Shown here in pieces: positions 1,191-41,330 of a stretch of 64,000 nt of DNA. The notes under the pieces were generated by a model. It was not told the origin of the DNA. It ran no database searches and was given only the letters and a program-made list of their open reading frames with translations. Position 1 is the first letter of the stretch, and each line of letters begins with the position of its first letter. Source of the stretch: Setoptus koraiensis (taxonomy: Eukaryota; Animalia; Arthropoda); assembly GCA_048013815.1 (NCBI GenBank), contig CM106586.1:13082001-13146000 (forward strand), given 5' to 3'. A program made the translations under genes and the position numbers.

Positions 1191-1449
1191 TCAGTTCACC
1201 CTGCTGACCAGAGGCGTACCCGCAATTGAGCTGCTGCGACTCAGGGCATCGTCGTTGTCGACGTCCTCTTTTTCGTCGCTCGATAGGCCGTCGGCATCAA
1301 CTAGGCCATCCATTAATGCATCGACTTCATGATGGTGCCCGAATTGAGTGCCCATCCGCTCGCTCATACCCTCGGCTCCGTCCATGTAGGCGCCAAAATC
1401 GTCGTCGTTGGACGAGTTACCATCGCCGCCCTCGATGCCCATCTCGTGC
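1191..1449 (-). CDS. SoxD: SoxD copy 1, terminal exon (acidic C-terminal tail)
   Basis: Acceptor AATCACAG| at 1450; phase 2 joins RKKR to HEMGIEGGDG...SRVN-stop; homologous to 36471-36897. Confidence 0.9.
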
Positions 1450-1587
1450 CTGTGATTACATCATCATGGTAAATAAAATTGTTGATTGTTGGTTATAATG
1501 CAACGATTATATAATAATTCATATCTGTCGGTATCACTACTAATAGTCACTAGTACTAGTAACAACGGACCGTTGCGCAACACTCAC

Positions 1588-1774
1588 CTCTTTTTGCGCA
1601 TCAGCACCTTGTATTCGGAAATGCGCATCTTCTTGCCGTCCACTATGCAGGTCCGCTTCGGCCTCGGCCGATACCTGTAATCGGGATGTTTCTCCATGTG
1701 AACTTTGCTCAATCTAGACTGCTCCTCGTAGTAGGGCTGCTTCTCGGAGTTAGTCATGGCCTTCCACTTTTGGC
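1588..1774 (-). CDS. SoxD: SoxD copy 1, second half of HMG box and SoxD basic tail
   Basis: 187-nt exon, GAACAG| acceptor and AG|GTGAGT donor; encodes [63 protein letters not shown], with the SoxD-typical [13 protein letters not shown] tail. Confidence 0.96.
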
Positions 1775-1916
1775 CTGTTCATTTGCGCACAATACACAGT
1801 TAATGAGTTGAAAATAGTTGTTAGTTAACACACAAATTGTAATAAAAGAGCCATTGTTAGGTATCGTTGAATATTCACTGGAGAACAATTAAATAATTAT
1901 CAATTAGTGCACTCAC

Positions 1917-37181: not shown

Positions 37182-37368
37182 CTCTTTTTGCGCATCAGCA
37201 CCTTGTATTCGGAAATGCGCATCTTTTTGCCGTCCACTATGCAGGTCCGCTTCGGTCTGGGCCGATACCTGTAATCGGGATGCTTCTCCATGTGCACTTT
37301 GCTCAATCTAGACTGCTCCTCGTAGTAGGGCTGCTTCTCGGAGTTAGTCATGGCCTTCCACTTTTGGC
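37182..37368 (-). CDS. SoxD: SoxD copy 2, second half of HMG box
   Basis: 187-nt exon with the same splice phases as 1588-1774; 5 nucleotide differences, all silent. Confidence 0.96.
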
Positions 37369-37546
37369 CTGTTCACAGTTAATTAGTTGAGAATGGTTGT
37401 TAGTTGAGACACACAAATTGATTGAACACACAAATTGATCGAACACACAAATTAATCGAACACACAAATTAATCGAAGGGCCATTATCAGATGGCGACGA
37501 ATATTCACTCGTGAATAACGACATAATTATTAATTGGTGCACTCAC

Positions 37547-40500
37547 CTAATATCTTGGAAATGTTTGAGTTGTGCATATCGGGACACTCTTTCAGGATCT
37601 TGCGTCGCTCGTCCTTGGCCCAAACCATGAAGGCATTCATGGGTCGCTTGATGTGCGCCCTGCCCTCGCCGTCGCGCTTAGACTGTCTAATTATCTTGGC
37701 GCCAAGCAATTTATTTTGGCTTGTCGTCACAGTGACAATGTTGTTGCTCACCTGTCCTGTTGGCGATTGGTTGGTATTGTTGTTGAGGTTGTTTGATTGC
37801 ATAAATTGTCCAATTTTGTTTGCCTGATTTGCGCCCGTCTGCTGCTGTACAAACTGTTGCTGCTGAGCATCGGCCTTGCTGTTGCTGTTGTTGTGATGTG
37901 ATTTGCTGTTGTTGTTTGCATTTATTGCCCCCGTTGTCTGGTGTTTGCCCGACGATGACCTGCTCGATTGTTTGTTAGACGCTGCACTTGTCTGCTTGTT
38001 GTTTGCTGCCATTGCACTGCTATTTAGCGGTGATCTATCCCCCGATGAATGGTTTCTGTTTGAGGTCGATTTATGCAAATTCAACAATTGATGATGGTGC
38101 AAACTATTGACATTGTTGTTCTGATTATGCTGATGATGATGACTATCAATGTGATGATGATTCAACGCTGTAGAGCTGTTGTTGTGCAATCTCATGTTGG
38201 CCGCCAACGCGCTGGCCCTATGAGAGTGTCTGCCCGAGCTTGTGGTTGTTGCCGGCGTTGTTGTTGGCGACGCTGCCGTTGTTGTTGATGACGGCAATTG
38301 GTCGGCCGCCGCAGCCGACAACAACTGCTGATAGGGATTCTGATAATGAGCCAATCGGGCAAACGAAGACAATGCCTGAACCTGATCCAGACTGTCCGAA
38401 TGGGATAAATTTTGGTACGAATTCAGGGAATTATTTAAATATGATTGTAGGTTGTTGTGATTGTGATTGTTGTTGTTGTTTTGCTGCTGCTGCTGATGGG
38501 CCGGACTAACATTGCCACTGTGCGCAGCGTTGTCGGTGTTCTTTTGCGATCCGCTATTGCCGCCGCTGCTGTTGTAATGATTGTGATGATTACTTCCGGT
38601 TTGGCCGCTCAACTGATGCTGCTGGTGCTGATTTGGACTGTGGCTAGAGCCTTGATAATATTGATTTGACTTATTGTTGTTATTGCTATTAGCTGACAAT
38701 TTGCTAGTTAGTTGGGCCAACTGAATGGGACCTAGGCCGGCCTTGAGTAAATTGTCTAGCTCTAAATTTGTGAGCGACAACAGCGGATTGGTTGCTTGCC
38801 GCTGCTGGTTAGACGTTAGACCTGTGCGTTGGTGGTGGCGGTAATTGTCATCGTTATTATTGATATAGGTATAGTTATTAATAACAGAGTTATCGTCATG
38901 AGAGTAATTATTGTTGTAATTGTGATGCCTACCCGTCGCGTAATTGGTCGCTGCGCTTGCAACGCCCGCACCCGAGGAGCCAAGGGGCGGTGGACTATAC
39001 ATATTGCCGGTCATGTGATGCGATGCCTGCTGCTGCTGCTGCTGTTGCGTCATTATATTAGATGGCGACACTTTGCCCCCATGAAATTCATACTCATTTC
39101 CGGTTGCGCTACCGCTGTCCGTATAGCGGCTGCTACTTCGCTCTAGATGATGATGATTATCTAGACTGTTGGCGCTCGCGTCAAACGGTCTGTCCGCGGA
39201 GGGCATCTGCTGGCCCGGGGTACCAGCCAGGCCGGCTAGTTGGATTGATGATCTGCCACTGTTATTGTCTGTACCGTTACTGGCGCTATTATTGCGCGCA
39301 ATCATCTTGTTCAGGGCATTCAAGAATACCGCCGATTGGGCACTGGCGTCCATGGGCGATTGTAGGTGTTGTTGTCGTTGTTGTTGCTGCTGTTGCTGCT
39401 GTTGCAACTGTAGCTGTTGCTGATGCTGTTGACCCATCTGATTGAACAATGAGCTCAGATTGGCCAAATTAGCGGCGGCCAGGTTCGGGTGACCGGCCCC
39501 ACCCAGCAAGCTGGCGTAGATGGCGGCGGCAGCGGCGGTCGCTTGCGCCTGTGACTGATCTTGGCCGGCGCACATGCCGGCGCCGCTCTGGAGCGGTTGT
39601 TGTTGTCTACCCGACGACGATGAGGTCTGATGAGAGGTCGCGTTGTTGGTGGCGCTGTTGGCGCTCGAGGGCGACGCGGAGGAACGTGATGACTTGTGTT
39701 TGTTGATTTGCTGTTTGCCGCTATAGGGACTGTATTGTCTGGCGTGCAAATGATTGTGCTGTTGTGATGGTGGTTGTTGTTGTTGTTGATTAATAGGACT
39801 AAATCGGTGGGAATGATGCGATTGGATTGTATTGCTGCCAGCGGTTTGCTGGGCGCCTCGGTTCGAGGCGCCCAGAGGTGGTGCTGCTGCTGTTCTGGTG
39901 CTGGTGTGTTGTTGATGCTGCTGCTGCTGTTGTTGTTGCTGCTGAGATGACATAAGTGACGATCTTGACGGTGGCGATTGGTTGTTGTTGTTTGCTGCCG
40001 CCGCGGCAGCAGCCAATCGCATGAATTGTTGTTGCGATGTGCTGACGTTTATCGGGGGCAATTCCGAGCTGTTATCACTATTCATCGATGAATGCGTCGA
40101 GCCCATCGGCGAATGAGTGGCCCGATTGTGATGATGATTGTGATGGCCGGTGGGCGATGAACAATTGCGACTAATAGAGTTAGTGTTTGCGCTGCCTTGC
40201 TGCTGCTGCTGTTCTAGGGGCGCCGGCGAGCCGGGCGATTGCGAATGGGCCACGGCGGCTTGGGCCGCAGCCGCCGCTGCTGCTGCCGCCGCTGCGGCCG
40301 CTATAGCGGCCTGGTTACCCTTGGACGTCTGGAACAACAGACTGAACGCCAGCGAATTCAATTGTTGCTGCTGCTGATCGGCCATTGAGTTGTGCCTCGC
40401 CGGATTTTGTTGGTGTGACGCTGATAAACTGTTGTTGTTGTTGTTGTTGTTACCCGTAATATCACTAGTGGCCTGAGGTGAGCCAATCGGTGACGCAATC

Positions 40501-41330
40501 ACACTGTCAATTTTGTTTGATTTGTTACTATTGCTGCTGCTATTGTGTCTTGCTTGTTGTGTTTCGTTGATTGTTGCTGTCTTGCCATGATAGAGTAGGT
40601 TGCTAGATGGCGACACAGACGACCGGTGATGATCTGTTATAATCGATGGCGACTTGACCATGTTGTGTCTGTTGTGATGATGCTCAGCGCTTTTGTTGTG
40701 AACAATTTGGTTGCTGTTGTTGTTGTTGTTTGCCCAATTAGTGAGCACACTGCTATAATTAGATAGGAAACTATTGGCTTGATTATTTACGTGTGGGTTA
40801 TTCACGTGTGAATCAGGCCCCAGTGATTCGTTGTCGTCTGAGCTTGTGTCGTGCTCAGATTGATTGTTGTCATGGTGATTGTATCCGGCAGCTACTGTGT
40901 TAGTTGACGATGTGTCCGCCAGACAGTCGTTGTTTGGCGTTGTTGTGGCTGCAATCATGTCAATTGGCGATTTTAAAATTGGCGTATTTCTGTTGCTGCT
41001 GCTGCTGCTGTTGTGCGTGGCCGTTGCTGGCGTTGTTGTTGTGCTGGTTGCTGTTGTTGTTGTCACGTTGGCACTGTCGACGTTGGCCTCTTCTGGTTCC
41101 TCTTGTTCCGTGTTAGAATCGGACAAGCAATCATCTGTTACGTCGTCGTTGTTGTTGTTGTTGGCGCTGGTCTGACTCGCTGGCGCTGCCACTTGTGAGG
41201 CCGACGACGATTTATACGAGAAGTCGAGCGGCGCCTCGGACTTTCTGTCCCTCGCTCGGGGCTCTTGGTCTGGGTGCATTTTGTCGCCGGGCTCCGTTTG
41301 TTTTCTTCGCTTGTTGTTGGCCTGTTTCAT
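37547..41330 (-). CDS. SoxD: SoxD copy 2, large low-complexity exon ending in first half of HMG box
   Basis: 1261-codon open frame, collinear with copy 1 ([38 protein letters not shown], [19 protein letters not shown], [12 protein letters not shown]); G|GTGAGT donor at 37546. The 3-exon CDS from ATG 41330 is 4398 nt (1465 aa); possible acceptor at 41321. Confidence 0.95.

What the first reader, a model, noticed from the sequence alone, without database searches (positions are those of the whole stretch)
1191..41330. Tandem SoxD duplication: two transcription factors with an identical HMG domain and different termini
Seen: two complete minus-strand SoxD genes about 35 kb apart with the same intron positions. 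Comparing 1917-2064 plus 1588-1774 with their counterparts gives 11 silent and 0 replacement changes; introns are alignable but differ in length (142 vs 178 and 138 vs 284 nt). Established: protostomes without genome duplication usually carry one SoxD (Drosophila Sox102F, C. elegans egl-13), and SoxD factors act mainly through cofactors. Inference: both copies are under purifying selection, bind the same sites and differ in cofactor surfaces and regulation, forming a competing or partitioned SoxD pair.
Basis: partly seen in the sequence, partly recalled or inferred. Interest (0 to 1): 0.8.

Follow-up and report, generated by a model that had tools for sequence, protein, structure and literature searches.

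The report
Tandem SoxD pair kept alike by conversion
A mite genome carries two intact copies of the developmental regulator SoxD 35 kb apart, and their identical DNA-binding domains come partly from the copies overwriting each other, a sound but fairly ordinary case of gene duplication that also occurs in a related mite.

Summary
Two complete three-exon SoxD genes lie on the minus strand: copy A at 1191-4917 (1148 aa) and copy B at 36471-41330 (1465 aa). Intron positions match, and intron lengths are 142/178 and 138/284 nt. The HMG domains are identical in protein.

The interpretation needs correction.
- Silent divergence is very uneven: dS is about 0.85 over most of the gene, 0.20 across the HMG box and flank (0.18 in its 342-nt core), and 0.10 in a central ~445-bp tract that has 80 consecutive codons without a silent change.
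- Intron 1 is 83% identical; intron 2 cannot be aligned.
- So gene conversion, not only purifying selection, keeps the HMG box identical. Selection is still real: omega is 0.31 outside the tracts.

The HMG tree places the genome with eriophyoid gall mites. A related mite contig (L006) also carries two tandem SoxD genes whose DNA similarity is confined to 384 bp of HMG box. The pair, or the habit, is therefore not unique to this genome.

Both copies keep the same short motifs. The differences are low-complexity inserts and a basic C-terminal tail in B.

This scan had not reported the pair before.

The parts
1917..4917 (-). Copy A, coding exon 1. It runs from the ATG at 4917 to the first half of the HMG box and ends ...SKIL-G|.
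   Evidence: A 1005-aa ORF. The GTGAGT donor at 1916 was read. Pfam HMG_box matches residues 966-1000, E 1.2e-11.
1775..1916 (-). Copy A intron 1 (142 nt), inside the HMG box.
   Evidence: GT...AG read. It is 83.5% identical to B intron 1 over 127 aligned nt. Fragariocoptes has an intron at the same position.
1588..1774 (-). Copy A exon 2 (second half of the HMG box plus the [24 protein letters not shown] flank).
   Evidence: Pfam HMG_box profile positions 37-69. It is 97.3% identical in DNA to B exon 2.
1450..1587 (-). Copy A intron 2 (138 nt).
   Evidence: GT...AG read. It is only 58% identical to B intron 2, so effectively unalignable. Fragariocoptes has no intron here.
1191..1449 (-). Copy A exon 3 (acidic C-terminal part, stop at 1193-1191). 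An AATAAA lies 53 nt downstream, at about 1135-1140.
   Evidence: The spliced CDS is open, 1148 aa. The poly(A) signal was found.
5098..5130 (-). Conserved upstream island of copy A: two Sox core motifs in opposite orientation (ACAAT-N9-ATTGT), followed by CCTATATTTG (TATA-like).
   Evidence: This is the only conserved stretch upstream of the ATG. The 33-nt pattern matches twice in the window against 0 expected.
37547..41330 (-). Copy B, coding exon 1.
   Evidence: A 1266-aa ORF. The donor was read. Pfam HMG_box matches residues 1227-1261.
37369..37546 (-). Copy B intron 1 (178 nt; it contains a short internal tandem repeat that A lacks).
   Evidence: Read; aligned.
37182..37368 (-). Copy B exon 2 (second half of the HMG box).
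36898..37181 (-). Copy B intron 2 (284 nt).
   Evidence: Read.
36471..36897 (-). Copy B exon 3. It is homologous to A exon 3 and adds about 50 residues that end in a basic tail (...KAQAKKGK).
   Evidence: The spliced CDS is open, 1465 aa. No AATAAA or ATTAAA occurs within 570 nt downstream.
41678..41710 (-). Conserved upstream island of copy B (same element as A 5098-5130, with 2 mismatches).
3236..3680 (-). Central homogenised tract in A. Its partner is B 39406-39860, and it encodes the AAAIYASLL motif region.
   Evidence: Identity is 94-100% in 100-column windows, against 65-80% elsewhere. A run of 80 identical-residue codons has no silent change; the maximum in 5000 shuffles was 49. dS is 0.10.
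39406..39860 (-). Central homogenised tract in B.
   Evidence: (families D7, D12).
1573..2140 (-). HMG-box homogenised tract in A (exon 1 end, intron 1, exon 2). Its partner is B 37167-37772.
   Evidence: One BLAST segment of 621 columns. dS is 0.18 and dN is 0 in the 342-nt core. Silent identity is 89%, against about 69% outside the two tracts.
37167..37772 (-). HMG-box homogenised tract in B.
27464..28700 (+). Gene N between the two copies. It is divergent from copy A and convergent with copy B.
   Evidence: Collinear tblastx matches to the gene directly upstream of, and divergent from, SoxD in Fragariocoptes setiger (L004 4641-2012). For example, KFNASWVQSDDNLSPQYSHLKRVACK matches KFNTSWVQASDQLSPEYSRFKRTSCK.

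Best explanation
The window holds a real pair of same-strand SoxD paralogs in an eriophyoid-type mite.

Origin. A block of about 4-5 kb was duplicated. It carried the core promoter island, all three coding exons and both introns. The copies now lie 35 kb apart with an unrelated gene (N) between them. Copy A keeps the ancestral position next to gene N.

State. Both copies have stayed intact and under purifying selection. Their low-complexity N-terminal and C-terminal parts drift apart through substitutions and triplet-repeat indels.

Homogenisation. Two segments have been made alike by non-reciprocal recombination (gene conversion):
- the HMG box with intron 1;
- a central tract of about 445 bp around a conserved AAAIYASLL motif.

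Inferred consequences. The two proteins have the same DNA-binding domain and the same short conserved motifs. One of these is an N-terminal PLDFS that resembles the CtBP-binding PLNLS of other SoxD proteins. The proteins differ in length, in Q/N/H-rich spacers and in a basic C-terminal tail present only in B. Each gene keeps its own TATA-like promoter island with a paired, inverted Sox site, so auto- or cross-regulation is plausible.

What is shown and what is inferred.
- Shown: structure, intactness, selection, and uneven silent divergence.
- Inferred: the conversion mechanism, equal DNA specificity, the CtBP motif, cross-regulation and expression.
For: Structure and intactness:
- establish the structure and the open reading frames.
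- SoxD identity: Pfam finds the HMG box. All best hits are Sox5/6/13/Sox102F, at 82-88% over the HMG box plus flank.

Selection:
- The HMG core has 0 replacement and 11 silent changes in 342 nt.
- Outside the tracts omega is 0.31, CI 0.26-0.37.

Conversion:
- dS is 0.85 in the bulk, 0.20 in the HMG box plus flank and 0.10 in the central tract.
- 80 silent-identical codons occur in a row; the maximum in 5000 shuffles was 49.
- Intron 1 is 83.5% identical and intron 2 58%.

Lineage:
- The clade {A, B, P0123, Fragariocoptes, R1, R2} has 100/99 support, and paralogs group by species.
- Contig L006 has two tandem SoxD genes whose DNA similarity is limited to 384 bp of HMG box (96.6%). In the 342-nt core there are 3 differences, dS 0.047 and dN 0.
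- Between species, HMG dS exceeds 1.

Synteny: gene N lies upstream of and divergent from SoxD both here (copy A) and in Fragariocoptes.

Shared motifs are documented, and the promoter island. Precedents are the PLNLS-CtBP interaction (PMC8816384) and the SOX6 double site that autoregulates SOX6 (PMC3025548).
Against: - There is no expression evidence for either copy. The runs found are of guessed type, and their word shares do not separate RNA from DNA.
- With only two sequences, low silent divergence could in principle reflect nucleotide-level constraint rather than conversion.
- Pairwise omega averages the two lineages, so recent relaxation of one copy cannot be excluded outside the HMG box.
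- Alignment of low-complexity regions inflates uncertainty in dN and dS.
- The PLDFS = PLNLS homology rests on a five-residue motif. An HMM of the canonical PLNLS block did not score it.
- Copy B lacks a canonical poly(A) signal near its stop.
Confidence: 0.75

Rival explanations
1. Ancient pair with concerted evolution. The SoxD duplication predates the split of this mite from the L006 species. B would correspond to the long upstream R1 type and A to the short downstream R2 type. Repeated conversion, at some point over nearly the whole gene in this lineage, makes A and B look young.
For: - Both genomes have a same-strand pair with the longer copy upstream.
- Both show near-identical HMG boxes within the genome, while between-genome dS exceeds 1.
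- B, R1 and P0123 share a basic C-terminal tail that A and R2 lack.
- R1 and P0123 are orthologous over the whole C-terminal half, 50% identity over 97% of it.
Against: - A and B are alignable in DNA over the whole 4-5 kb unit, including intron 1 and the promoter island. Neither is alignable to R1, R2 or P0123 outside the HMG box.
- Both A and B carry R1-type flanks (IVTVT-SQNKL, EMGIEG, GLVDA..L), and neither looks R2-like.
- No gene N homologue was found between R1 and R2.
- Fragariocoptes shows only one annotated SoxD, although its contig ends 2 kb beyond gene N.
Confidence: 0.3
2. This is a lineage-specific duplication in which the HMG identity is due to purifying selection alone, and the two proteins have diverged in cofactor surfaces to form a competing or partitioned pair.
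For: There are 0 replacement against 10-11 silent changes in the HMG box. The termini differ.
Against: - Purifying selection on protein sequence does not explain a four- to eight-fold drop in dS, a silent-site run of 80 codons, or the conserved intron 1.
- The recognisable short motifs are the same in both copies.
Confidence: 0.15
3. One copy is a non-functional, untranscribed duplicate on its way to decay.
For: Neither copy could be shown to be expressed. Copy B has no canonical poly(A) signal within 570 nt. Copy A has lost the C-terminal tail.
Against: - ORFs of 3.4 and 4.4 kb are still open at dS about 0.85.
- All splice sites are intact.
- At least 31 of about 40 indel events are multiples of three, and the rest compensate. 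Triplet repeats favour that pattern anyway.
- Omega is 0.31.
- The promoter island is conserved in both copies.
Confidence: 0.08
4. Assembly artefact (a haplotig or a false duplication).
For: None beyond the general risk in tandem regions.
Against: The copies show about 22% DNA divergence, length differences of 1 kb, different flanks and a different gene between them. Both copies' specific 31-mers are present in several runs.
Confidence: 0.02

Closest known systems
SoxD-1/SoxD-2 of spiders, scorpions and whip spiders (arachnopulmonate ohnologs; PMC8661403, PMC6307133)
   Same: Two retained SoxD genes in a chelicerate. Sub- or neofunctionalisation of expression has been proposed for them.
   Different: They arose by whole-genome duplication, are unlinked, and are not reported to be homogenised. 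Here the copies are linked 35 kb apart in a non-WGD mite lineage, and their HMG boxes have been homogenised.
Vertebrate SOX5/SOX6/SOX13
   Same: They are group D paralogs with nearly identical HMG boxes that recognise the same sites. SOX6 uses a PLNLS motif for CtBP and represses its own promoter through a double, oppositely oriented Sox site.
   Different: The vertebrate proteins dimerise through a leucine-zipper coiled coil, which was not detected in A, B or their mite relatives. The vertebrate paralogs are unlinked WGD products.
Single-copy protostome SoxD: Drosophila Sox102F, C. elegans EGL-13
   Same: They are orthologous by HMG box (82-88% identity to arthropod SoxD). EGL-13 works with CTBP-1 through PLNLS.
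   Different: They are single genes with the canonical N-terminal blocks (MSSKRKSPP, MDDVLKRLTSK, coiled coil, PLNLSKPK). The mite proteins lack those blocks and have a long lineage-specific low-complexity N-terminus instead.
Tandem SoxD pair R1/R2 on metagenome contig L006/L005 (ENA ERZ761561, ERZ27241721)
   Same: It is a same-strand tandem pair with the longer copy upstream. The HMG boxes are identical in protein and nearly so in DNA. The motifs PLDFS and AAAIYA(S/T)L are shared.
   Different: The spacing is only 6.7 kb, and there are no introns. Similarity is confined to 384 bp, and the flanks are fully diverged. R2 is short (437 aa) and lacks the C-terminal motifs.
Concerted evolution of tandem gene duplicates in general (established knowledge; e.g. 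globin and Hsp70 pairs)
   Same: Short conversion tracts of a few hundred bp give mosaic silent divergence between linked paralogs.
   Different: Here the tracts coincide with the DNA-binding domain of a developmental transcription factor, and a similar HMG-limited tract is seen in a second species.

Membership tests
Sox family | HMG box with the RPMNAFMVW motif | tested here: met
   Pfam PF00505 matches both halves in both copies. The motif is present in both translations.
SoxD orthology group (Sox5/6/13, Sox102F, EGL-13), defined by the HMG box | The HMG box and its flanks group with group D proteins rather than other Sox groups | tested here: met
   All 120 best named hits are SoxD-type proteins. 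Identity is 82-88% over 120-135 residues that include the group D flanks KIIRQ... and [18 protein letters not shown]. No other Sox group was included in the tree, so the assignment rests on best hits.
SoxD orthology group | Intron splitting the HMG box after ...SKIL-G | tested here: inconclusive
   The intron is present in A, B and Fragariocoptes at the same codon phase. It is absent from the intron-less L006 genes. Its distribution in other SoxD genes was not examined.
Canonical SoxD protein architecture | N-terminal leucine-zipper/Q-box coiled coil for dimerisation, plus the MSSKRKSPP and MDDVLKRLTSK blocks | tested here: not met
   HMMs were built from 24 arthropod and lophotrochozoan SoxD proteins. 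They give no positive score in A, B, R1, R2, P0123 or Fragariocoptes. Phmmer of A exon 1 against 1.84 billion representatives matches nothing N-terminal of residue 840. Q-rich segments could still form coiled coils; this was not tested.
Canonical SoxD protein architecture | PLNLS (PXDLS-type) CtBP-binding motif | tested here: inconclusive
   A variant (A/V)PLDFS(Y/R)(K/R)SS is conserved near the N-terminus of A, B, R1, R2 and Fragariocoptes. It resembles D.PLNLSKPK, but the motif HMM did not score it. Binding was not tested.
Linked paralogs under gene conversion (concerted evolution) | Tracts with silent or intronic divergence far below the rest of the gene | tested here: met
   dS is 0.10 and 0.20 in the tracts against 0.85 elsewhere. 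The silent-site run test gave 0 of 5000 shuffles. Intron 1 is 83% identical and intron 2 58%.
Linked paralogs under gene conversion (concerted evolution) | Paralogs cluster by species although the duplication predates the species split | tested here: inconclusive
   A+B and R1+R2 cluster by species in the HMG tree. Whether the duplication is shared or independent could not be decided.

The most novel reading that the evidence does not exclude
A tandem SoxD pair may be ancestral to eriophyoid mites, with its HMG boxes evolving in concert across the radiation while the rest of the two proteins is free to diverge. That divergence would be complete in the streamlined L006 lineage and partial here. 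The result would be two regulators locked to one DNA specificity. They would have lost the canonical SoxD dimerisation domain, would share a CtBP-type repression motif, and would cross-regulate each other through a conserved double Sox site in both promoters.
Probability: 0.2. Interest if true: 0.6.

Novelty: new member of a known kind. Interest (0 to 1): 0.4.

Why it matters
Eriophyoid mites are known for genome streamlining and for losing conserved developmental transcription factors, SoxNeuro in Aculops among them (PMC7738191). Published surveys report a single SoxD in non-WGD arthropods (PMC8661403). A retained SoxD pair in two such genomes is therefore a modest surprise.

It also gives a clean natural case in which gene conversion holds the DNA-binding domain of two linked regulators identical while their other parts diverge. 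It carries a practical warning too: identical domains with only silent differences between linked paralogs should not be read as selection alone.

Tried and rejected
2. An exact look-up of the A exon-1 ORF in the assembly collection found nothing on record.
3. I first took the genome for a dipteran, because of the Q/N/H-rich proteins and a Lutzomyia best hit. I rejected this. The Lutzomyia model scores high only because it contains two HMG boxes, and the HMG tree puts A and B with Fragariocoptes at 100/99 support.
4. I considered upstream coding exons or a shared transcription unit with alternative 3' cassettes, for example through the ORF at 52302-53336. I rejected this for three reasons. Both ORFs start with a conserved N-terminus that matches the N-terminus of R2 (P0253). 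Each copy has its own conserved promoter island. An oppositely oriented gene lies between the copies.
5. A search for homologues of the 900-residue N-terminal part found none outside the paralog.
6. A search for R1/R2-type C-terminal or N-terminal sequence in the window by tblastn found only the PLDFS motif.
7. A search for gene N or other shared genes between R1 and R2 found none.
8. A literature look-up of the SRR accessions of P0123 found no paper.
9. Rfam found no matches in the window.

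
Full report
**1. What is there**

A self-comparison of the window finds one duplicated block, A 1187-5133 against B 36620-41713, at 72-86% DNA identity. Apart from triplet-repeat tracts, nothing else in the 64 kb is repeated.

Reading both copies on the minus strand gives the same three-exon structure.
- Copy A has exons 4917..1917, 1774..1588 and 1449..1191.
- Copy B has exons 41330..37547, 37368..37182 and 36897..36471.
- All introns are GTGAGT...CAG.
- The spliced reading frames are open and give 1148 and 1465 residues.
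- Pfam finds an HMG box split between exons 1 and 2 in both copies.

With the LGAK flank included there are 11 of 342 nt.

**2. What kind of gene, and whose genome**

All best hits are group D Sox proteins (Sox5/6/13, Sox102F), but only over residues 932-1068 of A, at 82-88% identity. A phmmer scan of A exon 1 against 1.84 billion representative proteins finds nothing that matches the first ~840 residues.

Several signature residues are shared only with a few sequences. The residues are [26 protein letters not shown], and the absence of the EMRQLWC motif after the box. The sequences that share them are:
- a transcript from an unnamed transcriptome (P0123, 94.5% over 127 residues);
- two metagenome contigs;
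- partly, the gall mite Fragariocoptes setiger.

An ML tree of the HMG box plus flanks gives the clade {A, B, P0123, Fragariocoptes, R1, R2} with 100/99 support on a long stem. The genome is therefore an eriophyoid-type mite. Follow-up notes on other windows of this genome say the same (s1-314190, s1-303149). I did not determine the species. Two published two-chromosome eriophyoid assemblies would fit.

**3. Selection**

- In the 342-nt HMG core there are 11 silent and 0 replacement changes.
- Outside the two homogenised tracts described below, dN is 0.26 and dS 0.85. Omega is 0.31, with a bootstrap 95% interval of 0.26-0.37.
- Both long ORFs are open. About 40 indel events separate the exon 1 sequences. 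At least 31 of them are multiples of three, and the rest compensate each other. This is weak evidence, because triplet repeats slip in threes anyway.
- Both copies keep all splice sites.

Purifying selection, averaged over both lineages, is therefore supported.

**4. Uneven silent divergence: gene conversion**

- Identity along the DNA alignment is 65-80% over most of exon 1. It is 94-100% between A 3236-3680 and B 39406-39860, and 97% in the HMG exons.
- Using only codons with identical residues, silent identity by region is 65% (N-terminal), 95% (central tract), 72%, 89% (HMG) and 74% (C-terminal).
- The central tract holds 80 consecutive such codons without a silent change. The maximum in 5000 shuffles was 49.
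- dS is 0.10 in the central tract and 0.20 in the HMG region, against 0.85 elsewhere.
- Intron 1, inside the HMG box, is 83.5% identical where aligned. Intron 2 is at the level of unrelated sequence.

Selection on the protein cannot lower silent and intronic divergence in this way. The simplest explanation is two conversion tracts of about 450 and 570 bp, with the central one the more recent. So the 'identical HMG domain' is partly a product of homogenisation. The absence of replacements among the changes that have accumulated since then still shows constraint.

**5. A second pair in a relative**

Fetching the contig of P0253 showed two same-strand SoxD genes on one 13.9-kb metagenome contig (L006, GC 65%, intron-less genes).
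- R1 lies at 383-3304 (973 aa).
- R2 lies at 10001-11314 (437 aa).
- The species recurs in a second sample (L005, 99.8% identical).
- R1 and R2 are alignable in DNA only over 384 bp (96.6%), which is the HMG box with short flanks.
- In the 342-nt core they differ at 3 sites, with dS 0.047 and dN 0. Between species, dS exceeds 1.
- R1 is orthologous to P0123 over its whole C-terminal half, at 50% identity over 97% of it.

HMG-restricted homogenisation of a tandem SoxD pair is therefore seen in two genomes.

**6. Shared or independent duplication?**

This remains undecided.

For a shared, old pair:
- Both pairs have the same orientation, with the longer copy upstream.
- B, R1 and P0123 share a basic C-terminal tail that A and R2 lack.

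For independent events:
- A and B align in DNA over the whole unit, including intron 1 and a promoter island. Neither aligns with R1, R2 or P0123 outside the box.
- Both A and B have R1-type flanks.

Synteny adds one fixed point. The gene between the copies (N, about 27.5-28.7 kb, plus strand) has a clear homologue directly upstream of, and divergent from, the single SoxD found in Fragariocoptes. Copy A therefore sits in the ancestral position. The Fragariocoptes contig ends 2 kb beyond N, so a B-like copy there cannot be excluded. No homologue of N was found between R1 and R2.

**7. Protein features**

The canonical SoxD N-terminal blocks are clear in an alignment of 24 arthropod and lophotrochozoan SoxD proteins. 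They are MSSKRKSPP, MDDVLKRLTSK, the leucine-zipper coiled coil, and D.PLNLSKPK. HMMs built from these blocks do not score in any member of the mite clade.

The clade shares other motifs instead:
- an N-terminal (A/V)PLDFS(Y/R)(K/R)SS, found in A, B, R1, R2 and Fragariocoptes;
- an AAAIYA(S/T/A)L motif, found in the same five;
- after the box, E(M/L)GIEG and GL(V/F)D..(D/K)L, found in A, B, R1 and P0123.

PLDFS resembles the PXDLS-type PLNLS through which SOX6 and EGL-13 bind CtBP (PMC8816384). That link is an inference from five residues. Both A and B keep all of these motifs. They differ in about 300 residues of low-complexity insertions and in B's extra tail. The claim of 'different cofactor surfaces' is therefore not supported by anything recognisable.

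**8. Regulation**

Upstream of the two ATGs, the only conserved stretch is a 33-nt island at A 5098-5130 and B 41678-41710. It has two mismatches and occurs twice in the window against none expected. It holds two Sox core motifs in opposite orientation (ACAAT-N9-ATTGT), followed by CCTATATTTG.

So the duplication carried the promoter, and each copy has kept it. This argues for separate transcription units. Vertebrate SOX6 represses its own promoter through a conserved double, oppositely oriented Sox site (PMC3025548). Auto- or cross-regulation here is a hypothesis only.

A has an AATAAA 53 nt after its stop. B has no canonical signal within 570 nt.

**9. Expression: not tested**

Six runs hold copy-specific words of A, and four of these also hold words of B. 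Their type is guessed, and the word shares cannot separate RNA from DNA.

**10. Comparison with what is known**

- The published view is one SoxD in non-WGD arthropods and two or more in arachnopulmonates, with occasional lineage-specific duplicates in spiders (PMC8661403).
- In my searches, Oppia nitens has two distinct SoxD genes on different scaffolds that fall in different clades. Extra SoxD copies in non-WGD mites are therefore not unprecedented in public data.
- The Aculops genome paper analysed Sox genes and reported loss of SoxNeuro. In the text I could read it does not mention SoxD copy number.
- Gene conversion between linked paralogs is a well-known process.

**Verdict**

This is a real and correctly described duplication. 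It is a new member of a known kind. The added points are that the HMG identity is partly conversion-driven and that a related mite shows the same arrangement. Interest is moderate.

Noticed in passing
It has a clear homologue in Fragariocoptes setiger, at the syntenic position upstream of and divergent from SoxD. Several collinear tblastx segments support this, including the C-terminal ...FN.SWVQ..D.LSP.YS..KR..CK.
   Followed up: partly
L006 383-3304 and 10001-11314; L005 2349-3512: The relative's two SoxD genes have no introns. The window's copies have two introns each, and Fragariocoptes has only the intron inside the HMG box. The R1 reading frame is open upstream of its called ATG and contains the PLDFS motif at nt 92 with no ATG before it, so its true start is unclear.
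   Followed up: partly
P0002 (Lutzomyia longipalpis, UniRef A0A1B0CDK7): This public gene model contains two identical SoxD HMG boxes (residues 211-315 and 530-634). It is either a tandem duplication fused into one model or an assembly duplication. It inflates the model's scores in searches.
   Followed up: no
P0004 and P0015 (Oppia nitens); P0007 and P0144 (Medioppia): Oribatid mites appear to have two distinct SoxD genes on different scaffolds. These fall in two separate well-supported clades of the HMG tree, one of them with Dermatophagoides. That would be an older SoxD duplication in Sarcoptiformes, and I did not see it described in the surveys I read.
   Followed up: no
window 52302-53336 (-): A 344-aa T/Q/N-rich ORF with no Pfam match lies 11 kb upstream of copy B. 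I considered and set aside the idea that it is an upstream SoxD exon. Its nature is unknown.
   Followed up: partly
window 54428-54620 and 32407-32585: There are two clean short-unit tandem arrays, a 10-mer GAATATCKGT with about 19 copies and a 16-mer with about 12 copies. Many CAA/CAG-type triplet tracts also lie scattered on both strands of the intergenic DNA.
   Followed up: no
window 35900-36470 (-): Copy B has no AATAAA or ATTAAA within 570 nt of its stop, and a possible donor (CAG|GTAACA) lies at about 36580 inside exon 3. Its 3' end may differ from the simple model.
   Followed up: no
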